Positions 1-18,607 of a stretch of 64,000 nt of DNA are shown here, piece after piece. The notes under the pieces were generated by a model. The model worked only from the letters and a program-made list of their open reading frames with translations. It searched no databases and had not been told where the DNA came from. The first letter of the stretch is position 1, and the number at the start of each line of letters is the position of its first letter. The DNA lies in IMG/VR virus record IMGVR_UViG_3300030107_006644, positions 141,518-205,517 of that record, one strand, 5' to 3'. Made by a program: the position numbers and the translations under genes.

Positions 1-1332
1 AACACGGCCGGAGACGGAACAACAACGGCTACAGTGTTGTCTCGCGCAATACTTACGCAGGCGCAAGCGTTCTTAACTGCCGGCTCATCGCCTATCGAAC
101 TTAAACGTGGCATAGATAAAGCTGTCGAAGTTATAAGCGATAGACTGTATAAACAGGCAAAGCCAATTTCCAGTCAAGAAGACATTGCACACGTTGCCAC
201 CATATCCGCTAACGGCGATAAGGTTATAGGACAACTGATAGCTACGGCAGTGGATGCGATTGGTAAGGATGGGGCAATCACAGTAGAGGAAGCTCGTTCC
301 TTGACTACGGCACTCGATATTGTGGAGGGCTTTCAACTAGGCAGTGGATTTGTATCCTCGTCTTTTATTACGGACGAGCGCCGTGGGGCTGTTCGGTACG
401 AAAACAGCTACGTGCTGGTTACGGATGGCACAATCGACACGGTGGATGAGTTGCTTCCTGTGCTTGAGGTCGTGGCTCGCGAGAACAGGCCGCTAGTCGT
501 TGTCTCCGAGAACATCGAGGGGCAAGCATTGGCCGCTCTGATAATGAATTCAGTACGAGGCACGTTGAAGGTAGCAGCTATCAAGGCGCCTAGATATGGC
601 GAAGAGCGCCGCAACATACTTAAGGATCTGTGTTATGCTGTGGGAGCAAAGTTCGTCTCACGCGAATCTGGAGTCGGACTCCGCGAAGTAAAGTTGGAGC
701 ATCTGGGCACATGCAAAAGTATTGAAGTCTTAAAAACCAACACCACAATTGTTGGCGGCGGCGGAAACTACGAAGCTTTAGAAAAGAGGATCGAATCACT
801 CAGGGTAGAGCTTTCGCAGACGGAGAACTTGCATGAGTGCGAGAGGTTACAAGAGAGAATTACACGTCTATCTTCTGGCGTTGCCATAATAAGGGTTGGC
901 GCGCCAACTGAAATTGAAATGGTAGAAAAGAAGCACAGAATTGAGGATGCATTAGAGGCTGTCCGCTCCGCTCAAGAGGAAGGCATCGTTCCCGGCGGAG
1001 GCACTGCGCTAATTAGAGCGGTGACCAACTTAGAGGTACAGACCGAAAACGAGACTCAAGCTCAAGGTGTTGAGATTGTTCGTCGCGCCTGTTCAGATCC
1101 TCTACGTCAGATGGCTATTAACGCTGGAGAATCTCCCGACATTGTGCAGGAGAAGGTTGAGGCTCTAGAGGATTCCGTCAGCGGATATGATTTTGCCGCT
1201 GGAGAAATCAAAGATTTGATCGAGGTGGGAATTATCGACCCAGTAAAGGTCACGCGAACCGCACTTGAGAACGCAGCCTCGGTAGCTAGTACCTTAATTA
1301 CGACAAATCATGCAATAATACAAGTTGATTAG
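1..1332 (+). CDS. groEL: Group I chaperonin GroEL/Cpn60-like, 5' truncated by the window edge
   Basis: Frame open from base 1 (NTAGDGTTTATV); AIIRVGAPTEIEMVEKKHRIEDAL, EEGIVPGGG, GIIDPVKVTRTALENAAS; no C-terminal GGM tail. Confidence 0.96.
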   Translation, partial: NTAGDGTTTATVLSRAILTQAQAFLTAGSSPIELKRGIDKAVEVISDRLYKQAKPISSQEDIAHVATISANGDKVIGQLIATAVDAIGKDGAITVEEARSLTTALDIVEGFQLGSGFVSSSFITDERRGAVRYENSYVLVTDGTIDTVDELLPVLEVVARENRPLVVVSENIEGQALAALIMNSVRGTLKVAAIKAPRYGEERRNILKDLCYAVGAKFVSRESGVGLREVKLEHLGTCKSIEVLKTNTTIVGGGGNYEALEKRIESLRVELSQTENLHECERLQERITRLSSGVAIIRVGAPTEIEMVEKKHRIEDALEAVRSAQEEGIVPGGGTALIRAVTNLEVQTENETQAQGVEIVRRACSDPLRQMAINAGESPDIVQEKVEALEDSVSGYDFAAGEIKDLIEVGIIDPVKVTRTALENAASVASTLITTNHAIIQVD

Positions 1333-3740: not shown

Positions 3741-4085
3741 ATGCCAAATATTCTTTTGGGTTGCCTGCTGTTTGTCATAGGGCAAACACTGGTCTGGTTT
3801 CAGTTAAACTCTCAGTTTGTATGGGATTGGTGGAAAGACAAGCCAATACCGGCCATTGTTCTCTTCTCTGTACCGGCCAGCTTTTGCTTTTGGTATGGAG
3901 TGAGAATGGTGGTCGGAGAAATGAACGAACTATGGGGACCGAGATTGCTTATTTTTGGCATGTCTTACTTGACGTTTCCCTTGTTAACATGGCATTTTAT
4001 GGGGGAGAGTATGTTCGCGCCAAAGACGCTAATTTGTGTCCTCTTATCTTTTACAATAGTAGGAGTACAACTTTTTTGGAAATGA
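3741..4085 (+). CDS. Small 4-TM membrane protein (SMR/EamA-like size)
   Basis: 114 aa with four hydrophobic segments. Confidence 0.7.
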   Translation: MPNILLGCLLFVIGQTLVWFQLNSQFVWDWWKDKPIPAIVLFSVPASFCFWYGVRMVVGEMNELWGPRLLIFGMSYLTFPLLTWHFMGESMFAPKTLICVLLSFTIVGVQLFWK

Positions 4086-4129
4086 GGGAGCCACTGGCTC
4101 CTTTTTTGTTGGTATTAGGGCTTTAAATA

Positions 4130-4138
4130 ACTATTTAC
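4130..4138 (+). promoter_or_regulatory. CTATTTA late-promoter-like motif
   Basis: actatttac upstream of the 1746-aa gene. Confidence 0.5.
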
Positions 4139-4152: not shown

Positions 4153-7100
4153 GTGGAGCTTTATATGAAGAAGATTTACGAGGGCTGGCGACGTTATGTT
4201 AAGAGAGTTCAACTCGATGAGTCTCGCAAAGTTAAACGTTCGCAGCTCCAAGAAAATTTAGAAACACTGAACGAGATTTCTCGCGAAGTCTCAGACAGAA
4301 TATACAAATGGATGCGCGATGCATCGGTCATGGACTATTCGTTTGATGAATTGTTTGACGGTAAGATGCGCATGGCTATGCCGTTCGACTCTGAAGATGC
4401 GTTGAACCTTAAGAAGGTCGTCCGCGCACTCAAGAAAGACGGTTGGCAAGCCGGCGAAATGGTTCCGTGGGAAGGGGGCATGCACAGCGCCAACAAGTTC
4501 CCCACGCGCACGGTCAAACAGAAGAGACAAAGACTTGCAGACGAGGGCGGCGGCTTTTACGAAGAAGAGATCGAGGTCGCGGATCTGGGCCTTGCCAAGA
4601 GTTATGAAAAGGAAATACCCGCAGGCCCTCGCAAGGGAGAGATCATCCAGCGTACAGACAAGCTAGGAATGGGCAAAGCAATCGCCAAACTTGTTAAGGA
4701 GAAAAAGCTAGATAAAGAGTTGCTGGATTGGTGGCTTAAGAAACAAACTTATTATACAAAAGACAGGAACTGGACAGAGATCGAGGCATTGTTCGCCAAC
4801 ACTGAAGTGGATTATACTGTCATTATCTCGCGCCATCCAGTCGATGTACTCCGTATGAGTGATATTGGCAGCATCAGATCGTGCCACAGCGAGGGGCATA
4901 GTCACTTCCAATGCGCTGTGGCAGAAGCTAGGGGTCATGGACCCATCGCGTACCTTGTTCCGACGACAGAGTATGATAAACTCATGGCCGGCTTGTATGA
5001 GGAATATGATACTGCTGATGATCCTGAGTCGGCATACGATGTGAATCGATCCACCAGCAAATTACTTAAAGCACACGCAGTGTTCAAAGCAGAAGAATAT
5101 ATCAAAAATCACATTACGACCATACACTCTCGCTGGTCATCGATATACAAAATAATTGACAATATCAAAACTAGCAAGGACGAGGATATGCTTGAATTCG
5201 CAATCCAAGCAGTCTTCGATGCCGACCCTGTGTATGGAGAACTAGACCCTACCGTTCGCGGCTTGCTAACTGATCAAGCTGTGATGGACGCTGTGGTTGC
5301 CAAAGCCGAGGGCAAGGAATGGTCGCTCCGTCCAGACGACACGCAGGAAGACGAACCTGACGAACCTGAAGAAATCGGAGACATATCCAAGTTTGATGAT
5401 AAGGAAATCTTCAGAGACGGGCAGCGCGGAGTTAAAGGTATCGTTGCAAAGGGTCGCGTCAGGTTTAGAAAATTTGAAGATAGCGACTCGGATATGCAAT
5501 TTATTGCCCCAGAGCACAGAACATATGGTGCAGTTCCTCCCGGCTTTGTCAAGTCGATGGTCAAGTGGGCCGCAGAGAGCCAAGAGCAGACGTTTAGAGA
5601 CAACGGTTTTCTAGGCCGCCACCCAGAGCAGAGAGGCTTGCACGCCCCCAACTGGTACAGCCTGACTAGATATGGAGGATCGTATGAGGACACAGAAGAT
5701 GGGGATGTGCTGACGGCACTCTTTCAGCACTATGACTCGGAATTTAGTTCTTATAAGCTGGGTTGGAATGTCGATCATCACACCGAAGATGAGCAGGACA
5801 GCCTCGCCGAACAATATGAGCAGAGAGTCGACGATCTTAATGATTACGCGGCCAACAATTTGGGGCACTGCAGCACCCACGCCGAGGTTAATGATGACGG
5901 TGAAGAGCCCTATGTCTATGCCAGCGGAGACTTGTCAATCGAATTAAACCTTCTAGGCTGGGGCGGCTTGATGGAAGACTATGTTGGCACAAACTACTAT
6001 CAATCAAGAGGCGCCGATGAGGACGGCGACCCATATATTATTCCAAAGAGTTGGGGCGGTGATTATCAAAAGAGAAGACAATTTGAAAGAGCAATCGAAG
6101 ACAAGCTGGACATCTACTCGGAAGAGACGGATTGGGAGGTTAATGTTCAAAAAGGTGGAGCAATAGGTGAAAAGGGCCCAACAACAGTTTTAGAAGTGCG
6201 ATTTAGATTTAGCATGGAAGATGGTCACACTCCTGATGACTACGAGAACTTTATTGATTATCTTAAGTCCGATGTCGATGACAAATATGAGAACATTCGC
6301 GAAGGAATAAGGTTAGCACTGGTTGAAGAAGGGTACATGCTCAGAAACTACTTCGACAAGCTTAATTATGCAGCGACAGAAGATGACGAGGGAGAAGAGA
6401 TCGAGCCCGGCCCTACTCCAGCGGAGGAATTTGCTGGAAGTCTTCAGCACTTCGAATTCTATCCTCCATCGGATGATGGCGATGGCGAAATGTTGTTCGT
6501 GTCTCGCGGGCCCGGAAAGGTTAATTATATTACAACACCCACAATGATGCCCGCCTCGCTCCGAAAGCATGACAGAGCAACAGGCTGGACGGTGGCTGAT
6601 CTTGAGACAGCGTTTGGTGGCGAACGGTTCTCACTTGGATTCGGCACACCGCCGTCAGTCAAACACACAGGCCTTGGCATGCATAAGATAGCCATGGCCC
6701 TTAGCGACATACAAGAGGAAGCGGAAGCATATGCCGGCAGGCAATTGTCGCTTGACTTTGGGGAGAGATACGAGGCACCACCCGATCAGGATGTACTTCC
6801 AGACTTTGCAAAGAATGTGGAGTTCATAACCGTTCTTGCTACACCAACTGCTTCACAACAAGCGGGACTACCAGAGACAGGCGATAAGGACTCTAGACAT
6901 TTAGGTTTTGGGATCAGGGTTAAGATTCTTTCTGTTGATTCTGAACGCGAAATTAAAGGTGCAATTGCGTTTATGGAATATGTCGATAAGGAAATTAGGA
7001 CAATTGCCAGAGCATTTCAAAGTCTATGGGAACCCGCAATTGAAGAGGCTGAAGAAACAAAAAAGAAGGCGCAAGCCGCAGCAGTTAGCAAAGGCACGAT

Positions 7101-9393
7101 GGAGCAGCTTACAAACGCTCTCGACACTAAGGTGAGGAACATGCTCAACACCCCTAGGCCCGGTAATCCTGATTATCAGCCACCTCTTGTTGCTGTATTA
7201 AAGGCTTATATTGAGTGGGCCCACGCAGCATGGCCAGAAATGCACTTGCTTGAACGCAGAGTGCTTATAAATCAGTATTTGAGGCCGCTACAGCAGGGAA
7301 GTCTCGGCACATCAGCGGGTAATTTTGAGCCGAACAGCACTGGAAGCAGTCACTCTCCACTGCACTGGAAGCGAGCGGTTCAGCAAGCCCATCGCGAAGC
7401 CGGAGCCCCAGAAGCCGTGTGGGGCAGATATGATTGGTATGGTGATGCTGATTTTAGGGATATTATAGCGAAGCACCAAGCCGAGGCCGGCATTGACAGA
7501 GATGCAGAACTTGATGCAGATATTGAGCAGGCAGAGCGTGTGCAACAACAGCTATCACCTGAAGCTGACGCAGAACAGGAAGAGCCCATCGGCCTCGCAC
7601 GCTTAGGTACCGCACTCGACCGAGGTGGTGGAGGGCCGATTGTCAGGAGACACGGATCCGCCAATCCCCCCGAGCCCGAGGATTTGAGAGAGGCCATTCG
7701 GAAAGCGATAAGCGGAACTATTTACGGTAAAGGAGAAATCAAAGTGTCAAACAAAGACAAACTTAGAGAAGCAATTCGAGGAGCAATAAAACAAAAGCTA
7801 GACGAGAATTGGCTGCAGCGCGGGATGGCGTATGCAACTGGTCAAGGCGAAGAGTATGATCGCGATCAGACAGTCGCAAGAGAAAGCGAAGAAGCAAGAG
7901 AGCAAGGACTGCGTGGTCGGCCAGATCCAGATTATGAGCCACCTCCATATCTAGACAGAACATCGCAGTCAGGTCGACGCCCGAACGATATTTATGCCGG
8001 CTCCATTGCTGAACCAGATTACTTACCTGCAGAGTACGCCGGTTGGGAGCAGGGCGATGCAACCCCTTTCGAGCAAGATGTTCAAAATTGGTACCAGCTA
8101 GGCGGCCCGCTTGAAGTTGACGAATTTGGGTATCCAAGTGAAGACTACGAAGCTGGTACGAACTTCATGGCGGGCAGCGATCCTATGAGTGAATACTTTG
8201 TTGATCCTGTGGACAATCCTTACCTATACGATGCGATGACCGGCTGGTATGAAGGTGGCCTAGGCGACACTTGGACAGACCAGTTTGGAATGCAACGCGA
8301 TTGGGCACCCGAATTGCTTTATGGAGATCCGCGAAGGCATTTAGAGACCACACAACCGCCCGAAACGTGGCTTGATCCACTGGGCTCTATGGAAATACCT
8401 TGGCGAGGACGAGCCCCCGCTGAAGGCGAGTCGCACGACATTACACAAAACATACTCGATCAATACTTCGGTACGCACAACGACTTTGCCGGCCGTGTAC
8501 ACCCAGTGCACGGCGGCCGAAGCACTCATTTAGCTATCGATGCCGGCGGCAGAGTGGGCGATCCACTTTATGCTAGTTTGCCGGGCTACGCACACTTGCA
8601 ACGGCGCTATGGTGGGGGCGGTAACACTGTTGGCATGGTGTCCCTAGTCCCAGATCCTAATGATCCGACGCAACCCTACTACGTTGATCAGCGATACATG
8701 CACATGAGGTCTCACCCCGGCGGCTATACGACAAGAGGCCAACGAGTTGAGCCCGGTCAGTTAGTGGGTGAGCTTGGAGGCACCGGCACATCGACCACTG
8801 GACCTCATCTACATTGGAGCATGCAAGGTGGCGATCTTGGGACTGAATTGGGGGGCGGCGGAGTGAGGGTCGGGTTCGATCAGCCGGGAACCAGTCGAGC
8901 CCAGACAGACGCCTATTTCAATCCGCGAGTGGAGAGAGTTGCGCCTGTAAATCCGGGCCAACTGGCGACTCACTGGAAGTTCCCCGACAACAGCTATACC
9001 GTTCCAGATACATATCGGACTCCTTACATAAACCCTACGTTACTTAGCCCTGATATATGGAACTACTCCTATTACAACCCGCCCCCGATGCAGGGCCCTG
9101 CCCCGTACATACCGATAGGCCCCGGCGATCCGGGATGGTATCCAGAGCCGGGAGAAGAAGGCTACGGAGTACTGCGAGAAAATGCCCAGACCTCTGACTT
9201 AAAAGACGCAATTCGAGAAGCTATCAAATTAAAGGTTTCCACGAGTGAAGAGGCTCACCATGGTGGGTGCGATGCCTGCGAAACTTGCGGCGAGATGCAT
9301 GGTCCCGAAGAGCCTTGCGAATTGCCAACCTTAGAAGAGGCGATTAGGCAGGCGATACTTCGCAAAATAGGCAAGAAGGTTAAAGATAGATGA
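4153..9393 (+). CDS. Large probable virion/internal-head protein with C-terminal M23 (LytM) peptidase domain; likely start ATG 4165
   Basis: RYMHM...GQRVEPGQLVGELGGTGTSTTGPHLHWSM is the M23 signature; repeated (L)REAIR.AI helices; acidic. Confidence 0.8.
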   Translation: MELYMKKIYEGWRRYVKRVQLDESRKVKRSQLQENLETLNEISREVSDRIYKWMRDASVMDYSFDELFDGKMRMAMPFDSEDALNLKKVVRALKKDGWQAGEMVPWEGGMHSANKFPTRTVKQKRQRLADEGGGFYEEEIEVADLGLAKSYEKEIPAGPRKGEIIQRTDKLGMGKAIAKLVKEKKLDKELLDWWLKKQTYYTKDRNWTEIEALFANTEVDYTVIISRHPVDVLRMSDIGSIRSCHSEGHSHFQCAVAEARGHGPIAYLVPTTEYDKLMAGLYEEYDTADDPESAYDVNRSTSKLLKAHAVFKAEEYIKNHITTIHSRWSSIYKIIDNIKTSKDEDMLEFAIQAVFDADPVYGELDPTVRGLLTDQAVMDAVVAKAEGKEWSLRPDDTQEDEPDEPEEIGDISKFDDKEIFRDGQRGVKGIVAKGRVRFRKFEDSDSDMQFIAPEHRTYGAVPPGFVKSMVKWAAESQEQTFRDNGFLGRHPEQRGLHAPNWYSLTRYGGSYEDTEDGDVLTALFQHYDSEFSSYKLGWNVDHHTEDEQDSLAEQYEQRVDDLNDYAANNLGHCSTHAEVNDDGEEPYVYASGDLSIELNLLGWGGLMEDYVGTNYYQSRGADEDGDPYIIPKSWGGDYQKRRQFERAIEDKLDIYSEETDWEVNVQKGGAIGEKGPTTVLEVRFRFSMEDGHTPDDYENFIDYLKSDVDDKYENIREGIRLALVEEGYMLRNYFDKLNYAATEDDEGEEIEPGPTPAEEFAGSLQHFEFYPPSDDGDGEMLFVSRGPGKVNYITTPTMMPASLRKHDRATGWTVADLETAFGGERFSLGFGTPPSVKHTGLGMHKIAMALSDIQEEAEAYAGRQLSLDFGERYEAPPDQDVLPDFAKNVEFITVLATPTASQQAGLPETGDKDSRHLGFGIRVKILSVDSEREIKGAIAFMEYVDKEIRTIARAFQSLWEPAIEEAEETKKKAQAAAVSKGTMEQLTNALDTKVRNMLNTPRPGNPDYQPPLVAVLKAYIEWAHAAWPEMHLLERRVLINQYLRPLQQGSLGTSAGNFEPNSTGSSHSPLHWKRAVQQAHREAGAPEAVWGRYDWYGDADFRDIIAKHQAEAGIDRDAELDADIEQAERVQQQLSPEADAEQEEPIGLARLGTALDRGGGGPIVRRHGSANPPEPEDLREAIRKAISGTIYGKGEIKVSNKDKLREAIRGAIKQKLDENWLQRGMAYATGQGEEYDRDQTVARESEEAREQGLRGRPDPDYEPPPYLDRTSQSGRRPNDIYAGSIAEPDYLPAEYAGWEQGDATPFEQDVQNWYQLGGPLEVDEFGYPSEDYEAGTNFMAGSDPMSEYFVDPVDNPYLYDAMTGWYEGGLGDTWTDQFGMQRDWAPELLYGDPRRHLETTQPPETWLDPLGSMEIPWRGRAPAEGESHDITQNILDQYFGTHNDFAGRVHPVHGGRSTHLAIDAGGRVGDPLYASLPGYAHLQRRYGGGGNTVGMVSLVPDPNDPTQPYYVDQRYMHMRSHPGGYTTRGQRVEPGQLVGELGGTGTSTTGPHLHWSMQGGDLGTELGGGGVRVGFDQPGTSRAQTDAYFNPRVERVAPVNPGQLATHWKFPDNSYTVPDTYRTPYINPTLLSPDIWNYSYYNPPPMQGPAPYIPIGPGDPGWYPEPGEEGYGVLRENAQTSDLKDAIREAIKLKVSTSEEAHHGGCDACETCGEMHGPEEPCELPTLEEAIRQAILRKIGKKVKDR

Positions 9394-11432
9394 GTTATGA
9401 AAAGATAGCTAACGATTGGAAGAGGTTTATGTCCGAGGATCTGAATCCCGACATAGAGGCTGCAATAGATCGCTCAAGTTCAACAGAGCCATCACCGGCA
9501 ACGGAAGAGGACTTTGAATCGTATGCTGCTGTGGCCGATTATGTTAGTGGTCAAGGCCACGCTCCAGAGGGAATACTCGGCTTTGCCGATCAGTATGACG
9601 CTAGCAAATATCCCGATTGGAACGATAGGGTCGCTCGAACGGACGCTGAGCTGGAATCCCTGCCCGGTCTTGCTCCTCGCGAAACAAGGTTGCCGGGCGT
9701 ACATCGAGGTCCGTACAGGGAAGACGCAGCTATATTTAGCGCCGCTGAATCCGAGGCTGCAGCCGAGGAAGAAAGGTTACGTCAGCGTAGAGAAGAGAAC
9801 GATTACTGGAGAGACCAGCACGCTATCTCGCAAGGCTATGAAAGCTGGAATGACATGGCAGAGAACGACGAAGATTTGAGGGCAACCCTGCAGGTCCATC
9901 AGGACCGTGAGGACGAGCGCGAGCGCAGACAAGCTTACGATGAGGAATCTATGGAACATATGATTGCTCTAGGAATGTATGAACGCCCTGAAGAGCCGGA
10001 GCCGGGCCGTCGATATGGCTTTGAGGATTGGCGAGATGAAAACCCTAATGTTGCAAACGATTTCCGGGCCACAGAACAAGTTATGGGCTCCTCTTTCCTG
10101 CAGACAGTCGACTGGGAAGGTATGTCCGATCAGGATTACGAGACGCTGCAAAGAGCGGAGTATTTGTTTTTGATGTTTGGAGGATCCGGCGCCCGTCGAG
10201 GAAATGCCGGCCACGCTCATCATGAGGATTCGGAAGAAGCAGACTCAATTTTAAGAGAATTGTATGGCACAGTGTACGATGAGATGCTTGAGCGAGAAGA
10301 TTTGGGTAAAATGGTTCGACCTGTCACAACTAGGGTCAGGGATCGCGATACCGGCGTTGTCGAGAGAGTTAAGCAGTGGCAAGAGTGTTCGGATGATGAT
10401 ATGCAACAGCATCCGACGACTGACGGTGATCGCGCCGGTCGCGGAACAGGCTGCAGACCCCAACTTTACAACTCTGTTGACACTAGGGATCGATACATAG
10501 ACAATGCGATGGGGCAGAACAAGTATCACTGGAGTGCAGCAACGATCACCTTTCTCAACAGACATATGGCTCCGAACTTTCGAGGACATCAGGGACACTT
10601 TGCATACATGGGCGATGCTAAACGTGCTCTAGATTCTGAAGAGTACGAAGTAGGAGATTATGTAGCTCACCGGCCCGTCGATGATGAAACCGGGACTACT
10701 CACGGACAAATAACAATAGGAGATGTCGGTGTGGGCTCTTCGTTATGTAGTCCAAGAGGAGGTACTGGTGATGGCTGGTCAAATATTGGGTCTGCCAATC
10801 ACTGTGATATTGTGATCGCAAAGGATGTAGATGGAAACCTTGTCACAATGGGGGGCAATATTGCTAACGGAAGACTGGGGATCCGCGTTTTTACTTCTGA
10901 TGTTAGGGCATACCTCAAGCAGCACGGCAGGCAGCCCGGCGTAGATGTTGTTAGTTGGACTCGCCCTTCGATGGTGATCGCGCAAGCGCAACAACCCGGA
11001 CCAGCCTCCGATGCATTGGCTTTAGCCGAACCTCTTCAAGAATCTAAGGACACAACAACTTTACGAACCGCAATCCGCTCTGCACTTAAGTTATTAAAAG
11101 AAGATTATATTCAAAATGTTTACGAGGCCCAGTGTTCGCTCAACATTCATAAGAAAAAGGGTGGCGATAAAAAACAAACCTTAACAGACATTCGTGGCAT
11201 CCCCGGTGTTACAATTGTTAGTGTGGTTCCCGGTACAAGTCGAGAGATGGGGCATACCTTTATAACAACGCTGTCGGTTAAGTTTGAACTCAACAATAAT
11301 CTGCCGCCGCGTAATTACATTAAGAGGGTTCTGGTTCCTCACTTACGAAGAGTAGAGGGCGTCAGCAATATTCAGGTAAAGCGAATAACTAAGTTATCTA
11401 ATGTGCAGGGGGAAGAAGATTATCATGGCTGA
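9390..11432 (+). CDS. Probable virion protein with DUF2272/CHAP-like amidase domain
   Basis: HWSAATITF...HCDIVIA...MGGNI; N-terminal WKRFMSE; LRTAIRSALKLLKE helix. Confidence 0.75.
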   Translation: MSYEKIANDWKRFMSEDLNPDIEAAIDRSSSTEPSPATEEDFESYAAVADYVSGQGHAPEGILGFADQYDASKYPDWNDRVARTDAELESLPGLAPRETRLPGVHRGPYREDAAIFSAAESEAAAEEERLRQRREENDYWRDQHAISQGYESWNDMAENDEDLRATLQVHQDREDERERRQAYDEESMEHMIALGMYERPEEPEPGRRYGFEDWRDENPNVANDFRATEQVMGSSFLQTVDWEGMSDQDYETLQRAEYLFLMFGGSGARRGNAGHAHHEDSEEADSILRELYGTVYDEMLEREDLGKMVRPVTTRVRDRDTGVVERVKQWQECSDDDMQQHPTTDGDRAGRGTGCRPQLYNSVDTRDRYIDNAMGQNKYHWSAATITFLNRHMAPNFRGHQGHFAYMGDAKRALDSEEYEVGDYVAHRPVDDETGTTHGQITIGDVGVGSSLCSPRGGTGDGWSNIGSANHCDIVIAKDVDGNLVTMGGNIANGRLGIRVFTSDVRAYLKQHGRQPGVDVVSWTRPSMVIAQAQQPGPASDALALAEPLQESKDTTTLRTAIRSALKLLKEDYIQNVYEAQCSLNIHKKKGGDKKQTLTDIRGIPGVTIVSVVPGTSREMGHTFITTLSVKFELNNNLPPRNYIKRVLVPHLRRVEGVSNIQVKRITKLSNVQGEEDYHG

Positions 11433-12162
11433 TTATTATGATAAGTGGAAACGCTTTATAGCAGAGCGAAAACAGGCGCCGCACCAAATCTACTGTGATA
11501 TGGATGGCGTTTTGGTAGACTTCGTTCGCGGTGCTCTTGTATCTATTAACGAGGATGTTAATAACGCCAAGCTTTCCGACAAGAAAGAGACAGGCGGGAT
11601 GACTGATCTTGGCCATCTTAGACGCGCCATGAAACGAGAAGGTGTGGACACCGTAACCGAAGAGCATATTGAAAAATTTGCAGGTGGACACTCTAAAGTG
11701 AGAAAATACGCCATAAGACATATGTATGCCAGCTTGTCTGATGATGTAGACTTCTGGGCTAATTTGCCTTGGATGGAGGGTGGTCGTGAGTTGTGGGACT
11801 CGATCAAAAAGTATGAACCTTATATTTTAACTGCGCCTATGGGCCCCGGCTCTGAAGAGGGCAAGAGAAGGTGGATTCGCAGAAATCTTTCTCCGTCGCC
11901 CAAAAAGATATTCATGTCTCACGACAAGTTTAAGTGGGCAACAGATAGCGGTGGAAACGCCAATATCTTAATAGACGACTTTATGACCAATATTGGCCCA
12001 TGGAGAGAGAACGGTGGCATAGCTGTCCATCACGATGCAACCGACCTGCAGGAAACTTACGCCGAACTGTTAAGAAACGGCATTGAGGTATTGCGAGCCC
12101 CCGAGAGTCATGAGGAAGATCCCATGTCGTCTATGCACGATGACGACGAGGATGTTATATAA
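11425..12162 (+). CDS. HAD-family 5'(3')-deoxyribonucleotidase-like protein
   Basis: IYCDMDGVLVDF motif I, ILTAP, LIDD, W...GGIAVHH; ATG 11425 overlaps the upstream stop. Confidence 0.88.
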   Translation: MADYYDKWKRFIAERKQAPHQIYCDMDGVLVDFVRGALVSINEDVNNAKLSDKKETGGMTDLGHLRRAMKREGVDTVTEEHIEKFAGGHSKVRKYAIRHMYASLSDDVDFWANLPWMEGGRELWDSIKKYEPYILTAPMGPGSEEGKRRWIRRNLSPSPKKIFMSHDKFKWATDSGGNANILIDDFMTNIGPWRENGGIAVHHDATDLQETYAELLRNGIEVLRAPESHEEDPMSSMHDDDEDVI

Positions 12163-12265: not shown

Positions 12266-13081
12266 ATGGGTCTAATGTCGAAAGCTATCACGATTTTTAC
12301 CACAGCTATGATGAGTGGTTGCGTACAAGTTGGTAGCACTGACCCCGTTGTTGTTAGCCCGACATTACCAAATGCACATTTTTGCGAAGCTGGTAGCGAG
12401 GTAAACAGAGAGGTACAATCCGCACCCTCCAGAAGACTCGCAAAGATAGCGACGAAGACAAGAAACGCAGCAGTTATGATACACCACCTCGACGGCTCAC
12501 GTCGAGGTTCTGGCGTGTATATGTCTTACGACAACCATCACTTAGTTTTAACCTCTGCTCACGTTGTGCAGGGCGGCCCACCGATAGTGAGAGTGACCAC
12601 GCATACCGGAGAGTCTGTTGTTGCACCTGTGGTTGTTGCGGCTCTTTCACATACAGAAGACTACGCCGTTCTCTTGATCGAGGAACCCTTGTCTTCTGCT
12701 ACAGCGATGCCATTAAAGATCCGCCAGAACTCTAGAAGCGGGATTGTCGGCGAGTCGATAGTTTACTCTGGTTCTCCCGGCCACCACGAACTTCTAACTC
12801 TTTACGGAAACGTGTCTGGTGTTGCTGCGAACGAGAATTTAATAGTACACTCCTATGCTTGGATGGGGGCTTCTGGCTCCGGTGTATTTGATGACAGAGG
12901 AAACCTTGTTGGCATACTGAGAGCTATAGACGTGAATGACGGCATAGTGGTGCCTCAACTGAATGAAGATATGGTCTGGGTTGCGCCACTGACAAGCGTA
13001 GACTTGCAGAGATTATCGCTGGTTCTGGAAATTTATGATCTAGCGAGTGAGGTAGATGAATTAAACATGCCGCAGAGATAG
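12266..13081 (+). CDS. Trypsin-like serine protease, probable lipoprotein
   Basis: LTSAHV (His), EDYAV (Asp), GASGSG (Ser); N-terminal hydrophobic stretch ending SGC. Confidence 0.88.
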   Translation: MGLMSKAITIFTTAMMSGCVQVGSTDPVVVSPTLPNAHFCEAGSEVNREVQSAPSRRLAKIATKTRNAAVMIHHLDGSRRGSGVYMSYDNHHLVLTSAHVVQGGPPIVRVTTHTGESVVAPVVVAALSHTEDYAVLLIEEPLSSATAMPLKIRQNSRSGIVGESIVYSGSPGHHELLTLYGNVSGVAANENLIVHSYAWMGASGSGVFDDRGNLVGILRAIDVNDGIVVPQLNEDMVWVAPLTSVDLQRLSLVLEIYDLASEVDELNMPQR

Positions 13082-13101: not shown

Positions 13102-14136
13102 GTGAAACAAGTTAAAGCATTTAAGATGTTGATGATGCTGCCACTGTTGTTCTTTACCTCTTGCTTATCAGTGGATTATAGAATGACCGGCGAAGGAGAG
13201 ACATCCGGCGAAAGCCAAATTATCGAGGTGCCAGTTTACATATTGGTAGAGGTGCCGGGCGAAACTGAATATGGGGAAATCTGGGTAGACTCTTTTGACC
13301 AACCTCAGAGCGTTGACGGTGTAGACATTCTATGGGTCATCGACACATCCGGTTCGATGTATAGGTACGACCCCGAGTTGATGGCTGGTATCGAGGCTAT
13401 GCTAGAGGCCTTACCAGAGACAGGATGGCGACTAGCTATGGTAAGCAACGATCCAACCAAGGCTTCTGTCGAGGCGCAGTTTCCTTTGGTGCCGGGCGAC
13501 GACATTGGTGACGCGATGGATATGTACAATGCCATGGGGCGCGGAGGAAGAGAAGAAGGCTTCGATGCGGCCTATGAGTATATCGTAAATAATTCTTATG
13601 CCTCCACATGGCTACGTCCAGATGCCGCTTTGTTAGTTGTTTTCGTCTCGGATGAAGAAGAGCAGAGCGACGATCACTTTACAGACATCGCTGATTTTAA
13701 GGCGTGGTATGGCTCTCAGCGAGGAGGCTCTGCATTTCTGGCTAGTATCAACAATGTTGCACAAGCAGACTCGGTATGTGATAACCCGCCAAGTTCTATG
13801 GATATTGGCGACAGATATATGGAGGCAACCAATTATTTTAGTGGAGTCGTTGTAGACATTTGCGCTGAAGATTGGGCCCCCGGCGTACAGGATGCGTCAA
13901 ACCGTCTGGAGCCATATGAGCATATAGAGTTAACATATGTGGTGAGCGATGAGTCCACTATCCGAGTTTTTGTCAACGGAGCGTTGAACTGGGATTGGTA
14001 CTATCAGGCGTCTGACAATACCGTGTATTTCACTGTGATTCCGGCAGGCAATGATCATGTGGATGTTGCCTATCATTATGATCCGGACGATCCGTATGGA
14101 AATGGTTCGGGAGACACGGGTGATACGGGAAGTTAA
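13102..14136 (+). CDS. vWA-domain lipoprotein
   Basis: DILWVIDTSGSM MIDAS, VVFVSDEEEQS; lipobox-like FTSC; C-terminal GDTGDTGS. Confidence 0.85.
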   Translation: MKQVKAFKMLMMLPLLFFTSCLSVDYRMTGEGETSGESQIIEVPVYILVEVPGETEYGEIWVDSFDQPQSVDGVDILWVIDTSGSMYRYDPELMAGIEAMLEALPETGWRLAMVSNDPTKASVEAQFPLVPGDDIGDAMDMYNAMGRGGREEGFDAAYEYIVNNSYASTWLRPDAALLVVFVSDEEEQSDDHFTDIADFKAWYGSQRGGSAFLASINNVAQADSVCDNPPSSMDIGDRYMEATNYFSGVVVDICAEDWAPGVQDASNRLEPYEHIELTYVVSDESTIRVFVNGALNWDWYYQASDNTVYFTVIPAGNDHVDVAYHYDPDDPYGNGSGDTGDTGS

Positions 14137-15392: not shown

Positions 15393-15728
15393 ATGAGTAA
15401 CAACAGCATGGAACTGATAACAGCGGGCGACGAAGATTTAAAGCCAAAGAAGCCTAGTAATCGCGCCCCCGAAGGTATACGGACCTTTACTGTCTGTCGC
15501 CAGCACGATGAGACTGGTATATCTGGGGAAGGCGTAGTTATTGAAGGCGCGACGTTCGCCACAGGCCATACGGTTATACACTGGCTCACTCCGGCACCCC
15601 GTGGATCAATTGCATTCTTTGATGCTTTTGATGACTTTATCAAGATTCACGTTACCAGCCATCCGAGCAACAACACCATTATCACGTTTGAAGATGGCGA
15701 ACAGACTATTTACGAAGGTAAGAGTTAG
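15393..15728 (+). CDS. Hypothetical phage protein
   Basis: 111 aa; DETGISGEGVV.EG..F..G.TVIHW. Confidence 0.75.
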   Translation: MSNNSMELITAGDEDLKPKKPSNRAPEGIRTFTVCRQHDETGISGEGVVIEGATFATGHTVIHWLTPAPRGSIAFFDAFDDFIKIHVTSHPSNNTIITFEDGEQTIYEGKS

Positions 15729-16289: not shown

Positions 16290-16370
16290 GTAGAACTACT
16301 TAAATTAAAGGTTCTCTCGAACCGCCGCGCGAAACTTCGCGGAAAATTTTTCAATGCGAGGTGCCAATGA

Positions 16371-16661
16371 GTGTCAATCAGGAGATTCCGAATCGGAGAT
16401 TACATACGCTGGGAGTCTGGAATCGAGGCATTCAGCGCAAGTGCGTCGGGCATTGTCCACCCAATCGAGTTCAGATACGACTATGGCATCGTGGTAGACA
16501 TAGCAGAAGGCAATCCGAAGGAGAACGCATCGGACGTTATCATCGCGTATTGTGTCGAAAAGAGAGATTGGATTGTTGCTCACGTTGACGATGCAGAATA
16601 TCGCATGGAACTGGTCAGCCGAGCACCAGAAAAGCCCATTGGTAAAGTCGATGGGAGATGA
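16371..16661 (+). CDS. MKVGDLV-family SH3/KOW-like protein
   Basis: FRIGDYIRW...YGIVVDI...MELVS. Confidence 0.7.
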   Translation: MSIRRFRIGDYIRWESGIEAFSASASGIVHPIEFRYDYGIVVDIAEGNPKENASDVIIAYCVEKRDWIVAHVDDAEYRMELVSRAPEKPIGKVDGR

Positions 16662-17049
16662 CAAGACGATAGAAGAGAAGCCGCCTGATGTGTTCGTAGG
16701 CGACATGATAAAGTGGAAGGAAGCCGAGTTCTCATATACGCCAAGCGACTACAAGGTTAAACACTACGTCGGAATAGTCGTAGAGGTGAAGGTGCCGGAA
16801 GCTACAGTGCAGGATATAATGTGGAACATATACTATAGTCACAGCTACGACCCATTGGTAGACGAGTATTACCGCAAGAACTTCTGGGACCAAAGATATG
16901 AAGAGGTGCCATGGATTAAGGTGTTGACTATTCAAGGCAAGACCGGAAAGAAGGTGTTTCGCTACCTTTCGATGGAGGATGAGTTTGAAGTCCTATCGCG
17001 AGCTAGTCTGCTGATCCTGCCAACCACGGAGAAGGAGCATGAAGAGTAA
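16651..17049 (+). CDS. MKVGDLV-family SH3/KOW-like protein with insertion
   Basis: VFVGDMIKW...VGIVVEV...IKVL...FEVLS; start placed at ATG 16651. Confidence 0.65.
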   Translation: MGDDKTIEEKPPDVFVGDMIKWKEAEFSYTPSDYKVKHYVGIVVEVKVPEATVQDIMWNIYYSHSYDPLVDEYYRKNFWDQRYEEVPWIKVLTIQGKTGKKVFRYLSMEDEFEVLSRASLLILPTTEKEHEE

Positions 17050-17269
17050 CCCCGATGCTTATGACATTGGCGATTACGTCGAAATAATGGTGTGTCCGTC
17101 CATTGGTGGCGGTGTGGAAGTCTGCTACGGGATTGTAGTGGCTAGCTCATCAAAAAAAACGAGCTATTTAATATACTTGTTTGACAAAAATCGCTGGAAG
17201 TGGTACAATGATTTTGAGCTTACACTGATGAGCGCAGCGGAAGAGGCAAATGGAACTAGGAAAAAATAG
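17039..17269 (+). CDS. MKVGDLV-family SH3/KOW-like protein
   Basis: YDIGDYVEI...YGIVV...YLIYL...ELTLMS. Confidence 0.7.
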   Translation: MKSNPDAYDIGDYVEIMVCPSIGGGVEVCYGIVVASSSKKTSYLIYLFDKNRWKWYNDFELTLMSAAEEANGTRKK

Positions 17270-17573
17270 CGGCGAAAGGCTACAAGTTTACAAATACACG
17301 GCAGAAGATGAGAACGGACAGATAGTGTTTTACTACACATACCCCGAGAAAAGCGAGAGAATCGTCAAGAGGGTTGAAGACAAGATTAAACAAGATGTGA
17401 TCGTGTTCGATATATTTCCGGGCTTAATCAATGGTGACGAAGAACTAGAAGAGGCAATATGGGTGACAACGCAAATACAAACTCCCATGTATCTTCCGGC
17501 AGGCATGGGCGTAACTATGCATGACTTTGGAACCATACTATACGGAATCGCAGAAGATGACGAAGACTCTTGA
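17250..17573 (+). CDS. Acidic hypothetical protein
   Basis: 107 aa; its stop TGA lies inside the first TTGACA of promoter element P1. Confidence 0.7.
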   Translation: MELGKNSGERLQVYKYTAEDENGQIVFYYTYPEKSERIVKRVEDKIKQDVIVFDIFPGLINGDEELEEAIWVTTQIQTPMYLPAGMGVTMHDFGTILYGIAEDDEDS

Positions 17574-17624
17574 CATGTTGCTGACAACTTTTCCATTGAC
17601 AGGCGGGTCGTGATGAGCTATATT
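17570..17624 (+). promoter_or_regulatory. Triple-box sigma70-type promoter element P1
   Basis: TTGACA 17570, CTGACA 17581, TTGACA 17596, 17 bp, TATATT 17619. Confidence 0.9.
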
Positions 17625-17647
17625 ATTAGGGTAAACAGGAGGAAGCC

Positions 17648-17923
17648 TTGAAGGTTGGAGATTTGGTAACGCTTTCATCTTATGGTAAGCGCATTAACTA
17701 TATGGGTAAGTGCATAGCCCAGCGAAAATATAACGGAGGATTTCGTGGCCCGTTGATTGGGCTGGTTATCGCAAAAGTCGAGCCCACACATTCGTGGGAG
17801 AAGCAAATGAAGTATTCGGTTGCATGGATTGATAACTGCGAGTTCAATCCACAAGGTCGAGATAACTGGGTGAAGTATTTTCACCGCAAAGACCTTAAGA
17901 TGGTCAAAAAAGCAAAGAAGTAA
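17648..17923 (+). CDS. MKVGDLV-family SH3/KOW-like protein
   Basis: MKVGDLVTL...IGLVIA...YSVAW...DLKMV; AGGAGG SD. Confidence 0.8.
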   Translation: MKVGDLVTLSSYGKRINYMGKCIAQRKYNGGFRGPLIGLVIAKVEPTHSWEKQMKYSVAWIDNCEFNPQGRDNWVKYFHRKDLKMVKKAKK

Positions 17924-17933
17924 GGAGATAAAC

Positions 17934-18556: not shown

Positions 18557-18607
18557 CATTTACTTGACAAAGTTTTCCTTGACTTTGCGCTCACTGTAGA
18601 GTATATT
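18553..18607 (+). promoter_or_regulatory. Triple-box promoter element P2
   Basis: TTGACA 18553, TTGACA 18564, TTGACT 18579, 17 bp, TATATT 18602. Confidence 0.9.

What the first reader, a model, noticed from the sequence alone, without database searches (positions are those of the whole stretch)
4165..12162. T4 capsid-targeting-like N-termini on three adjacent genes, including a metabolic enzyme
Seen: MKKIYEGWRRYV (4165), MSYEKIANDWKRFMSE (9390) and MADYYDKWKRFIAE (11425) share W(K/R)R(F/Y) near the N-terminus, the latter two ending in xxE. Established: the T4 internal-protein capsid targeting sequence (MKTYQEFIAE) is removed by gp21 after (I/L)xE. Inference: the HAD nucleotidase and two cell-wall hydrolases are tagged for packaging into the head and injection, i.e. 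a signal-peptide system for enzyme cargo.
Basis: partly seen in the sequence, partly recalled or inferred. Interest (0 to 1): 0.65.

Follow-up and report, generated by a model that had tools for sequence, protein, structure and literature searches.

The report
Capsid-loading tag on marine phage enzymes
Three neighbouring genes of an uncultured 205-kb marine T4-like phage carry worn copies of a 14-residue N-terminal tag that is shared by at least 12 proteins of this genome and hundreds in related phages, and that looks like a T4-type "address label" for loading enzymes into the phage head, although packaging itself has not been shown.

Summary
The three N-termini are degenerate copies of a 14-residue tag, consensus MKLL-h-ENWR-x-[YF]-[LI]-x-E. 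It heads 12 genes of this 205,517-bp marine phage genome and more than 160 ORFs in over 120 IMG/VR loci, on at least 84 unrelated protein families. The motif occurs 10 times in the predicted proteome, always within the first 20 residues, against 0.06 expected. Conservation is at peptide level, not DNA level. Positions 12-14, left free in my search pattern, read [LIVM]-x-E in 85% of cases, which is the T4 gp21 cleavage motif. The genome encodes a gp21-type S77 prohead protease and a gp23-type capsid protein. All 12 near-complete tag-bearing genomes tested have the protease. Homologues without the tag exist, so it is not part of the enzyme fold. A virion-gene promoter-like motif precedes the operon. 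A second tag, MKITKxQLKQIIKEE, also has [LI]-x-E at 12-14. Best reading: a T4-type capsid targeting propeptide, confidence 0.6. Packaging, cleavage and injection remain inferred, because no cultured relative or virion proteome exists. It is a new variant of a known kind.

The parts
4084..4104 (+). Terminator-like hairpin with a T tract. It closes the upstream unit, so genes 1-3 start a new transcription unit.
   Evidence: 9-pair stem with 5 GC pairs, followed by a T run.
4130..4137 (+). ACTATTTA motif, a putative late (virion-gene) promoter or regulatory element, 35 nt before the gene 1 start.
   Evidence: The motif is about 7-fold enriched upstream of genes. It precedes the baseplate wedge, head-tail adaptor, tail sheath and scaffold/MCP operon, and the tagged operons g090, g095 and g128. 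It is conserved in relatives G015 and G005. No sigma-70-like promoter lies here.
4165..9393 (+). Gene 1 (g128), 1742 aa. A tagged giant protein with a C-terminal M23 peptidoglycan endopeptidase.
   Evidence: The orthologue in G007 is 74% identical over 1200 aa.
4165..4221 (+). Degenerate tag 1 of gene 1 (aa 1-19). W is at position 8, followed by R-R-Y, with LDE at 17-19 as the candidate cleavage site.
   Evidence: The G007 orthologue keeps W8 and IEE at 17-19.
7684..7788 (+). Two internal L-R-E-A-I-R motifs (aa 1174-1182 and 1200-1208). They are candidate internal S77 cleavage sites (LRE|A) ahead of the M23 module.
   Evidence: The same LRE|A context occurs at the likely maturation site of the phage's own capsid protein.
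8524..8826 (+). M23 peptidase domain (aa 1454-1554). The HxxxD and HxH metal-binding motifs are present.
   Evidence: PF01551, E 1.3e-8; TagE, ShyA, lysostaphin. The motifs were read in the translation.
9199..9357 (+). Two further internal motifs (aa 1679-1687 and 1723-1731), with IRE|A and LEE|A sites. The last one is the point where G007 continues into the domain that gene 2 carries here.
9390..11432 (+). Gene 2 (g129), 680 aa. A tagged protein with a DUF2272/CHAP-like module and a C-terminal ferredoxin-like domain.
9390..9437 (+). Degenerate tag 1 of gene 2 (aa 1-16). W is at position 10, followed by K-R-F-M-S-E.
10431..10982 (+). DUF2272/CHAP-like putative cell-wall amidase or peptidase module (aa 348-531).
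   Evidence: PF10030, E 1.4e-5, just under the curated cut-off. (feature score 0.92, structural TM 0.55-0.60 to DUF2272/CHAP clusters).
11076..11417 (+). C-terminal ferredoxin-like (ACT/NikR-C-like) domain (aa 563-676), preceded by an L-R-T-A-I-R motif at 11061-11087. In relatives it ends giant tagged proteins or stands alone.
   Evidence: pLDDT 83; weak PDB matches, TM 0.4-0.65.
11425..12162 (+). Gene 3 (g130), 245 aa. A tagged NT5C-like HAD phosphatase, putatively a 5'(3')-deoxyribonucleotidase.
   Evidence: phrog_2643, E 9e-20. (1346 homologues, some named 5'(3')-deoxyribonucleotidase or carrying PF06941). (best folds are cdN/mdN).
11425..11466 (+). Tag 1 of gene 3 (aa 1-14), ending in F-I-A-E, the same last four residues as the T4 IPII/IPIII targeting sequence.
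   Evidence: The AF2 model puts a separate helix at residues 2-16 (pLDDT 64-78), ahead of a pLDDT-97 HAD core.
11488..12075 (+). HAD core and cap of gene 3 (aa 22-217). The catalytic DMDG motif is at aa 25-28.
   Evidence: (invariant C24 D25 M26 D27 G28).

Best explanation
The shared N-terminus is a portable, roughly 14-residue capsid-targeting propeptide of the T4 type. It is used by an uncultured clade of marine T4-like myoviruses with genomes of about 180-290 kb.

Inferred mechanism: the amphipathic helix (consensus MKLL-h-E-N-W-R-x-[YF]-[LI]-x-E) docks the newly made protein onto the scaffolding core of the assembling prohead. The gp21-type S77 prohead protease then cuts after the Glu of the terminal [LI]-x-E, usually Glu14. 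This releases the mature enzyme inside the head, from where it would leave with the DNA at the next infection.

In the window this applies to three proteins made from one late-type operon:
- a 1742-aa protein with an M23 peptidoglycan endopeptidase, which has further internal LxE|A sites that could release modules;
- a DUF2272/CHAP-like protein;
- an NT5C-like nucleotidase.

Shown: the tag, its position, its ending, its portability, its phage-specificity, its co-occurrence with the protease, and the shared upstream motif.

Inferred: binding to the core, cleavage, residence in the virion, and ejection.
For: 1. Extent. There are 12 tagged genes in this genome, in three clusters. My information-content estimate for chance is 1-2 matches.

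2. N-terminal position. The motif occurs 10 times in the proteome, all within the first 20 residues, against 0.06 expected. In held loci, 197 of 219 unique occurrences have the start codon exactly 7 residues before the Trp.

3. Protease signature at positions the search left free. Position 12 is L/I/V/M in 141 of 147 ORFs and position 14 is E in 127 of 147. [LIVM]-x-E at 12-14 occurs in 125 of 147, against a background of 1.6%. Conservation collapses after residue 14. T4 gp21 cuts after L/I-x-E, and CTS propeptides are 10-19 residues long (PMC9026906).

4. The machinery is present. The genome has a Gp23-type capsid protein (PF07068, E 2e-71). It has an S77 protease (PF03420, E 3e-31; 5JBL, E 2e-19, with the catalytic His and Ser aligned). 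The capsid protein carries a T4-like propeptide with an LRE|A site. S77 is present in 7 of 7 near-complete genomes with tag 1 and 5 of 5 with tag 2.

5. Portability. The tag sits on at least 84 BLAST-unrelated clusters, including HAD, Nudix, kinase-like, P-loop, HD and M23 proteins.

6. It lies outside the fold. Nearly all of about 120 NT5C homologues carry the tag. Three lack it and start about 10 residues before DMDG. Two others have a 40-50 residue linker between tag and fold. AF2 places a separate helix ahead of the fold. In mouse cdN the catalytic Asp is at residue 12, against 27 here.

7. Peptide-level selection. All six Leu and six Arg codons are used, and only a Shine-Dalgarno signal is conserved upstream.

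8. Phage-specific. Only about 7 canonical copies occur in 596 Gb of prokaryote genomes, all on short MAG contigs carrying the same phage genes.

9. Co-regulation. A terminator, then ACTATTTA, then the operon. The same motif precedes the baseplate, adaptor, sheath and scaffold/MCP genes.

10. An independent second tag (MKITKxQLKQIIKEE) in the same phages has [LIVM]-x-E at 12-14 in 40 of 42 ORFs when only residues 1-8 were constrained.

11. Likeness to T4. IPII and IPIII start MKTYQEFIAE. Gene 3's tag ends FIAE, and the tag reads like the T4 CTS plus one helical turn.

12. A cytoplasmic giant protein with an M23 domain and no export signal fits an ejected virion protein.
Against: - There is no direct evidence that any tagged protein is in a virion or is cleaved. 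The clade is uncultured.
- The planned tag-protease complex prediction could not be run.
- ClpP is also present in 7 of 7 complete genomes, so co-occurrence alone does not single out the S77 protease.
- The tag start (Met-basic-h-h-h) also fits the loose ClpX N-motif-2 degron class.
- Many cargoes are nucleotide-metabolism enzymes that a phage could simply express after entry.
- Packing 10 or more enzyme species plus many tag-2 proteins is more than T4 does.
- P1' after Glu14 is most often acidic, whereas T4 IP sites have Ala. T4 Alt does have Asp there.
- One own-genome tag (g041) lacks a clear [LIVM]-x-E.
- The similarity to the T4 CTS is by eye and too short to prove homology.
- That the upstream motif is a late promoter is itself an inference.
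Confidence: 0.6

Rival explanations
1. The tag is a docking helix for a different phage assembly that is not the capsid. Examples would be a hub that gathers nucleotide-metabolism and takeover enzymes into a complex, or a client signal for the phage GroEL. It stays on the protein, and the [LI]-x-E is part of the binding surface rather than a cleavage site.
For: - Nearly every tag position is conserved, not just one helical face, as expected for a specific protein-protein interface.
- Many cargoes are nucleotide enzymes: NT5C-like, Nudix, kinases, HD.
- GroEL is encoded just upstream, both here and in a distant relative.
Against: - It does not explain why two unrelated tags both place [LIVM]-x-E at residues 12-14.
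- It does not explain why conservation stops exactly at Glu14.
- It does not explain why peptidoglycan hydrolases without export signals carry the tag.
- It does not explain why the operon shares its upstream motif with virion genes.
Confidence: 0.13
2. The tag is an N-terminal degron that hands these proteins to ClpXP. The phage supplies ClpP and the host supplies ClpX. This would limit the enzymes to a time window of the infection.
For: - ClpP is present in this genome and in 7 of 7 complete tag-bearing genomes, some with two copies.
- The first residues (Met, basic, three hydrophobic, then a hydrophobic residue five positions on) fit the ClpX N-motif-2 class. The class exists per PMC12723719. 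Its consensus is from my memory of Flynn et al. 2003.
Against: - No ClpX-like AAA+ gene is in the genome.
- The phage encodes its own tmRNA with an LAA-ending tag, which already explains a phage ClpP.
- Degron classes are loose, whereas here N7, W8, R9 and E14 are near-invariant.
- The exact tag is absent from cellular genomes.
- An internal copy is retained at a domain junction in G007.
- The upstream motif is shared with virion genes rather than with sigma-70-like early promoters.
Confidence: 0.07
3. The tag is a protease-removed propeptide, but its job is assembly or zymogen control of head-internal or core proteins that stay in the particle or are degraded. It is not delivery of active enzymes into the next host.
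For: - The same evidence as for S77 processing applies.
- T4 core proteins gp22, gp67 and gp68 are also cut at L/I-x-E and mostly leave the head.
- In G015 a tagged acidic 182-aa protein is encoded just upstream of the protease, where T4 has its core-protein genes.
Against: - The cargo families are bona fide enzymes with intact catalytic motifs: the M23 metal site, HAD DMDG, and the Nudix box. These have no obvious structural role.
- The diversity and turnover of cargo (84 clusters) resembles the T-even internal-protein loci, whose products are injected (PMC3012670).
Confidence: 0.12
4. The similarity reflects a nucleic-acid element (a translation enhancer, operator or recombination site) or simple chance.
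For: Some codon preference is seen at residues 3 and 4.
Against: - All synonymous Leu and Arg codons are used.
- Nothing is conserved upstream except a Shine-Dalgarno signal.
- Amino-acid identity persists across relatives whose capsid proteins are only 55-59% identical.
- The statistics exclude chance.
Confidence: 0.01

Closest known systems
Capsid targeting sequence (CTS) of phage T4 internal proteins IPI, IPII, IPIII and Alt (Mullaney and Black 1996; reviewed in PMC9026906, PMC3012670, PMC5694885)
   Same: - A short N-terminal propeptide (10-19 aa in T4, about 14 aa here) on otherwise unrelated proteins.
- It ends in L/I-x-E, the gp21 cleavage motif.
- The phage has a gp21-type S77 protease, a gp23-type capsid protein and a helical scaffold.
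- Cargo genes sit in variable clusters.
- The T4 IPII/IPIII sequence MKTYQEFIAE shares with the tag the MK start, the Glu at position 6 and the final F-I-x-E.
   Different: - The sequence is distinct. It is four residues (one helical turn, N-W-R-x) longer, with an invariant Trp.
- It is conserved across hundreds of metagenomic contigs rather than only the T-evens.
- There are far more cargo species per genome (about 10-12, plus a second tag class).
- Cargo includes recognisable metabolic and signalling enzymes and giant multi-domain proteins.
- P1' is usually acidic.
- Targeting and cleavage are untested.
Long N-terminal propeptides of ejection proteins in phiKZ-like giant phages (phiKZ, 201phi2-1, SPN3US), cut by gp175/gp245
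   Same: Head-internal ejection proteins are made with N-terminal propeptides. A diverged gp21-family protease removes them after Glu. Paralogues can share identical N-termini (PMC5694885).
   Different: - Those propeptides are mostly over 100 residues long.
- Their motif is S/A-x-E.
- They are not a short portable tag found on many unrelated enzyme families.
Phage P1 Dar antirestriction system (DarA, DarB, Hdf, Ulx and others packaged into the head)
   Same: Enzymes and defence-countering proteins are loaded into the capsid during morphogenesis and injected (PMC9024508 and PMC12810830 listed; details from my own knowledge).
   Different: Loading depends on a hierarchy of specific proteins, not on a common cleavable peptide. 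The capsid and protease type is also different.
Cargo-loading peptides of encapsulins (HK97-fold protein compartments); from my own knowledge
   Same: A short terminal peptide is sufficient to direct diverse enzymes into an HK97-fold shell.
   Different: Those peptides are usually C-terminal and are not removed by a protease. The shell is a cellular nanocompartment, not a virion, and there is no delivery to another cell.
ClpX N-motif-2 degrons (Flynn et al. 2003; class confirmed in PMC12723719)
   Same: The N-terminus is Met-basic-hydrophobic x3. The phage encodes ClpP.
   Different: That degron class is loose and cellular. This tag is tightly conserved, phage-only, and ends in a prohead-protease motif.

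Membership tests
T4-type capsid targeting sequence (CTS) | Located at the extreme N-terminus, 10-19 residues long | tested here: met
   The Trp is at position 8 in 197 of 219 unique ORFs. The conserved block is residues 1-14. All 10 motif occurrences in the proteome lie within the first 20 residues.
T4-type capsid targeting sequence (CTS) | Ends in the gp21 cleavage motif L/I-x-E | tested here: met
   [LIVM]-x-E at 12-14 in 125 of 147 ORFs, against a 1.6% background, at positions not constrained by the search. Present in 11 of 12 own-genome tags within residues 12-19. Motif definition from PMC9026906.
T4-type capsid targeting sequence (CTS) | The phage has the T4 head-maturation set: gp21-type protease, gp23-type capsid protein with propeptide, and a scaffold core | tested here: met
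   PF03420, E 3e-31, with His and Ser aligned to 5JBL. PF07068, E 2e-71. The propeptide resembles that of T4 gp23. S77 is present in 12 of 12 near-complete tag-bearing genomes. The scaffold is assigned by position and composition only.
T4-type capsid targeting sequence (CTS) | Attached to mature proteins unrelated to each other, and dispensable for their fold | tested here: met
   At least 84 unrelated clusters. Untagged and linker-separated NT5C homologues exist. AF2 gives a separate helix.
T4-type capsid targeting sequence (CTS) | Sequence relationship to the T-even CTS (MKTYQEFIAE) | tested here: inconclusive
   Shared features are MK, Glu6 and a terminal F-I-x-E. A 4-residue insertion is needed, and the peptides are too short for a statistical test.
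T4-type capsid targeting sequence (CTS) | Sufficient to carry a foreign protein into the prohead core | not testable with these tools
   Needs a genetic system or in vitro assembly.
T4-type capsid targeting sequence (CTS) | Removed by the prohead protease, with the mature protein present in virions and ejected | not testable with these tools
   No cultured relative was found. No RNA or proteome data are on hand.
ClpX N-motif-2 degron | N-terminal Met-basic-h-h-h-x5-h | tested here: met
   The consensus M-K-L-L-h-E-N-W-R-x-[YF] fits. The class definition is recalled from Flynn et al. 2003.
ClpX N-motif-2 degron | ClpXP-dependent degradation of the tagged protein | not testable with these tools
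   ClpP is present. No phage ClpX. The host is unknown.
5'(3')-deoxyribonucleotidase (NT5C) HAD family (gene 3) | HAD core with a DxDG nucleophile motif and an NT5C-type cap | tested here: met
   DMDG is invariant. phrog_2643, E 9e-20. Homologues carry PF06941. The best structural matches are cdN/mdN, E 8e-6, with TM only 0.4-0.5. No direct Pfam hit was found for the window protein. Substrate is untested.
Peptidase M23 (gene 1 C-terminal module) | M23 domain with HxxxD and HxH zinc ligands | tested here: met
   PF01551, 35.4 bits, above the 28.7-bit cut-off. PDB relatives TagE, ShyA and lysostaphin. Both motifs were read in the translation.
DUF2272 / CHAP-like hydrolase (gene 2) | Match to the family profile above its threshold | tested here: inconclusive
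   PF10030, 25.4 bits, against a cut-off of 27. Atlas features 0.92 and TM 0.55-0.60 to DUF2272/CHAP clusters. No PDB or NCBIfam hit. Catalytic residues were not checked.

The most novel reading that the evidence does not exclude
An abundant, uncultured clade of marine T4-like phages uses two sequence-readable 14-residue address labels to fill its heads with a large and rapidly shuffled arsenal of pre-made enzymes. These include nucleotidases, Nudix and HD hydrolases, kinases, nucleotidyltransferases and cell-wall hydrolases, on more than 84 families. They would be injected with the DNA to rewire nucleotide pools and signalling, and possibly nucleotide-based immunity, before any phage gene is expressed. 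Tag 1 works by imitating the core-binding N-terminal motif of the capsid protein's own propeptide (LL-x-K-W ... LLE, shared with T4 gp23). If this holds, the injected proteome of uncultured phages could be read directly from metagenomes.
Probability: 0.35. Interest if true: 0.85.

Novelty: new variant of a known kind. Interest (0 to 1): 0.66.

Why it matters
If the tag is a capsid-loading signal, it turns an unsolved annotation problem into a simple motif search. The problem is knowing which proteins an uncultured phage carries in its particle and injects. Here the search already marks 12 proteins in this genome and hundreds in ocean viromes.

It would show that the T4 targeting-sequence principle, known from a handful of small internal proteins in coliphages, has been scaled up in the sea to deliver whole sets of metabolic and signalling enzymes. 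That would change how so-called auxiliary metabolic genes in these phages are read: as injected effectors rather than genes expressed after entry.

It also offers a second and third natural tag for packaging foreign proteins into T4-like heads. And it gives a concrete, testable substrate set for S77 prohead proteases.

Tried and rejected
- **Complex prediction.** There is therefore no structural test of tag-protease contact.
- **Close relatives among deposited phages.** Megablast of the region against deposited phages gave no match. tblastn with gene 3 found only distant homologues, and the two checked (HTVC008M, immuto) lack the tag. No cultured carrier of the tag was found.
- **Described T4-like relatives.** A pattern search of the five nearest described T4-like genomes gave 0 matches. 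The tag is therefore not a general T4-superfamily feature.
- **Gene 2 relatives.** The search for related loci with gene 2 gave no relatives. Only its C-terminal domain recurs.
- **Phe-variant tag.** The pattern for the Phe-variant tag gave 0 IMG/VR hits. That variant was seen only on metagenome contigs, so I could not test covariation between tag and capsid propeptide.
- **Literature.** Searches for the motif strings, and for a CTS in marine or metagenomic T4-like phages, found nothing relevant. This covers open-access text only and is not proof of novelty.
- **ClpP co-occurrence.** This was meant to discriminate between the protease hypotheses, but it did not: ClpP is in 7 of 7 genomes.
- **DNA-level repeat or RNA element.** Rejected.
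- **Chance.** Rejected.
- **Tag as part of the HAD fold.** Rejected.
- **Gene 2 and other tagged proteins of unknown function.** PDB sequence search and NCBIfam gave nothing.
- **Gene 2 C-terminal domain.** The fold search gave only generic ferredoxin-like matches.
- **Not used.** Read laying was not used, because no RNA run holds the region. No alternative genetic code was needed.

Full report
**What is there.** The window is the last 64 kb of a 205,517-bp IMG/VR virus record that CheckV rates as complete. Gene 1 ends in an M23 peptidoglycan endopeptidase (PF01551 above its cut-off; PDB relatives TagE, ShyA and lysostaphin). Gene 2 has a DUF2272/CHAP-like module at moderate confidence and a C-terminal ferredoxin-like domain. 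Gene 3 is an NT5C-like HAD phosphatase (phrog_2643). It has 1346 homologues, and some of the 120 listed are named 5'(3')-deoxyribonucleotidase or carry PF06941. Its nearest folds are the mammalian cdN and mdN enzymes.

I laid out the whole genome and called genes crudely.
- W[KR][KRQ][FY] occurs 10 times in 64,726 residues, and every occurrence lies within the first 20 residues of a protein. From composition, 0.06 are expected there.
- With a GTG-started gene and one W-S-K-Y variant, the genome has 12 tagged genes in three clusters: genome 58-61 kb, 115-123 kb and the window trio.
- The nine copies outside the window are closer to a consensus, MKLL-h-E-N-W-R-x-[YF]-[LI]-x-E. A profile built from that consensus scores the window's three poorly, so they are the most eroded members.
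- Their membership rests on orthologues. Gene 3's close homologues start with the canonical tag at the same distance from the catalytic DMDG. Gene 1's orthologue in the nearest relative keeps the same eroded form.

**It is a peptide signal, not a DNA element.** The tagged starts use different synonymous codons, and their upstream DNA is unrelated. Across metagenomic copies all six Leu and all six Arg codons appear, and only a Shine-Dalgarno signal is conserved upstream.

**Distribution.**
I estimate one or two matches by chance.
- The same pattern found 28 places in 596 Gb of prokaryote genomes. Only about seven are canonical, and all of those lie on short MAG contigs carrying the same phage genes.
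- The five nearest described T4-like genomes have none: a 484-kb uncultured phage, Microcystis phage Mel-JY01, Rhodothermus RM378, Flavobacterium phage immuto and Pelagibacter phage HTVC008M.
- The region occurs in marine metagenomes from at least two independent studies. Homologues come from Tara Oceans, including the viral size fraction.
- The tag is therefore specific to an uncultured marine phage clade.

**Portability.** After removing the first 16 residues, 170 tagged proteins fall into 84 clusters with no BLAST similarity between them. Recognisable cargo includes:
- HAD phosphatases of two kinds;
- Nudix hydrolases;
- a protein-kinase-like and a nucleotidyltransferase-like protein;
- P-loop kinases, an HD-domain protein and a GDSL-type esterase;
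- the M23 giant protein.

In the NT5C family nearly all of the roughly 120 listed homologues carry the tag. Three lack it and begin about ten residues before DMDG. Two others have a 40-50-residue linker between tag and fold. AlphaFold2 places residues 2-16 of gene 3 in a separate helix of modest confidence (pLDDT 64-78), ahead of a core at pLDDT 97. In mouse cdN the second catalytic Asp is residue 12, and here it is residue 27.

**The protease signature.** My search pattern left positions 5, 7 and everything from 12 onward free.
- Among 147 unique ORFs, position 12 is L, I, V or M in 141 and position 14 is Glu in 127.
- [LIVM]-x-E sits at 12-14 in 125 of them, against a 1.6% background in the same proteins.
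- Conservation collapses after residue 14.
- T4 gp21 cuts after L/I-x-E, and T4 targeting sequences are 10-19-residue N-terminal propeptides. In the T4 sequence, residues 4 and 7 serve targeting and residues 8 and 10 serve processing (PMC9026906).
- T4 IPII and IPIII start MKTYQEFIAE (read from NC_000866). Gene 3's tag ends F-I-A-E. The consensus reads like the T4 sequence with one extra helical turn. That is a resemblance, not a proven homology.

**The machinery.**
- The genome encodes a Gp23-type major capsid protein (PF07068, E 2e-71).
- It encodes a Peptidase_S77 prohead protease (E 3e-31) that aligns to T4 gp21 (5JBL, E 2e-19) with the catalytic His and Ser in place.
- The capsid protein has a T4-like propeptide. 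It includes an LL-x-K-W ... LLEG motif shared with T4 gp23 and a likely maturation site LRE|A, both conserved in two relatives.
- The protease is present in 7 of 7 near-complete genomes that carry tag 1 and 5 of 5 that carry tag 2, including genomes of 280-293 kb. Other tag-bearing contigs are fragments by CheckV.

**Expression context.** A terminator-like hairpin at 4084-4104 closes the upstream unit. ACTATTTA follows at 4130-4137, then GGAG, then the start of gene 1. There is no sigma-70-like promoter. ACTATTTA is the most enriched upstream word in the genome. It precedes the baseplate wedge, head-tail adaptor, tail sheath and scaffold/capsid operon, as well as the tagged operons g090, g095 and g128. 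It recurs in relatives, directly before a tagged-gene island in G005. I read it as a late, virion-gene promoter. That reading is an inference.

**A second tag.** While examining a more distant relative I found a second N-terminal label, MKITKxQLKQIIKEE.
- In loci that had been fetched for tag 1, 42 ORFs begin with its first eight residues. At the unconstrained positions 12-14, 40 of them read [LIVM]-x-E.
- It is present in at least 120 further IMG/VR loci, often several per locus.
- Eroded copies head g033-g037, g058 (next to the protease) and three window genes.
- Related L-x-E-A-I-R motifs lie inside genes 1 and 2.

Two unrelated peptides place the same cleavage motif at the same distance from the N-terminus. 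In my view this is the strongest single argument for processing by the prohead protease.

**Gene architecture in the nearest relative.**
- G007's gene 1 orthologue (1720 aa, 74% identical) ends with the ferredoxin-like domain that gene 2 carries in the window.
- The break lies exactly at an L-E-E-A motif, so gene 2's tag and CHAP-like part look like an insertion at a module boundary.
- G007's NT5C domain is fused behind a 480-residue tagged protein, and it keeps an internal copy of the tag at the junction. Cutting there would release the nucleotidase. This suggests polyprotein logic, although it could be a recent fusion relic.

**Rivals.**
- *ClpXP degron.* The idea is not silly. ClpP is in 7 of 7 complete genomes, and the tag's first residues fit the loose N-motif-2 class (and my memory of Flynn et al. 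2003). Against it: there is no phage ClpX, and the phage has its own tmRNA with an LAA-ending tag, which explains a phage ClpP. The tag is far more conserved than any degron class, it is absent from cells, and it does not account for Glu14 in two tags.
- *Non-capsid docking tag.* This cannot be excluded, but it leaves the same facts unexplained.
- *A propeptide used for assembly only, without delivery.* This is possible for some members.
- *DNA or RNA element, or chance.* Both are excluded.

**What is not shown.** No tool result shows that any tagged protein is in a virion, is cleaved, or is injected. No cultured relative exists in the collections searched, and no RNA data cover the region. 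I put the capsid-targeting explanation at 0.6.

**Comparison and novelty.** The principle is established for T-even phages: diverse internal proteins share only a targeting sequence that loads them onto the scaffolding core (PMC3012670; PMC9026906). In a longer form it also holds for phiKZ-like phages (PMC5694885). Several things are new here:
- a distinct, longer and deeply conserved tag in an uncultured marine clade;
- a second tag alongside it;
- the number and kind of cargo;
- the possibility of reading an injected proteome from sequence.

Open-access literature searches found no description of either motif. I class the finding as a new variant of a known kind, with interest 0.66.

Noticed in passing
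window 35934-39134, 46456-47313, 52073-52969; genome 55243-58247 and 73251-73703; L195 8615-14354: There is a second N-terminal tag, consensus MKITKxQLKQIIKEE. It sits mostly on small proteins of unknown function. It has [LIVM]-x-E at residues 12-14 in 40 of 42 ORFs and occurs in at least 120 IMG/VR loci. In the window's genome the copies are eroded. One heads the conserved small protein right after the S77 protease.
   Followed up: partly
window 54371-54707 (+); tRNAs at 55923-58227: The phage encodes a tmRNA (RF00023, 126.7 bits) with tag peptide ANNNNHFDSVRLAA, plus five tRNAs. Together with the phage ClpP (genome 137911-138546), this suggests the phage brings its own trans-translation and degradation axis.
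   Followed up: partly
genome 87606-89516 (capsid protein), residues ~20-65: The capsid protein's propeptide carries LL-x-K-W-E ... LLEG, shared with T4 gp23 (LLNKWKPLLEG). It resembles tag 1 (LL-x-x-W-basic ... L-x-E). The tag might imitate the capsid protein's own core-binding motif. This is a by-eye similarity only.
   Followed up: partly
L162 (G007) 4844-12162, minus strand: In the nearest relative, the NT5C domain is fused behind a 480-residue tagged protein and keeps an internal tag copy at the junction. The gene 1 orthologue ends with the domain that gene 2 carries in the window. This implies module shuffling at L-x-E-A motifs.
   Followed up: partly
window 12266-13081 and 13102-14136: The next two genes encode a trypsin-like protease (PF13365) and a VWA-domain protein. 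Both have lipoprotein-type signal peptides rather than the tag. They are syntenic in G007 and, for the protease, in L195. These look like exported phage lipoproteins of unknown role.
   Followed up: no
window 15393-15728: This 111-aa protein is 60% identical to an L195 gene that carries a precomputed Pfam hit to Acb5 (PF26761). My own Pfam scan of the window protein gave nothing at E 0.01. It is a possible counter-defence gene about 3 kb downstream of the nucleotidase.
   Followed up: partly
window 4130-4137 and 15 other upstream sites genome-wide: ACTATTTA(T) is the most enriched upstream word. It marks virion genes and tagged operons, sometimes only 13-16 nt from the start codon. That spacing would imply very short or absent leaders.
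   Followed up: partly
window 1-1332; L195 1669-3222: A phage GroEL (Cpn60) gene lies a few kb upstream of the tagged operon, both here and in a distant relative. This conserved synteny is unexplained.
   Followed up: no
window ~16300-25900 and 35130-40470: There are many small paralogous genes whose products start with or contain K-V-G-D-L-V, about 55-110 aa each, interspersed with short antisense ORFs. Their function is unknown.
   Followed up: no
window 26000-32000: This is a GC-rich island (GC 0.54-0.56 against about 0.45, with GC skew near zero). It contains a MoxR-like AAA ATPase candidate at 29324. It may be a recent acquisition.
   Followed up: no
L047, minus strand, locus position ~3960: A tag-like peptide (14 residues, then a stop) lies in frame at the very end of an ORF that is open for 1131 codons upstream. 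It may be a frameshifted or fused gene.
   Followed up: no
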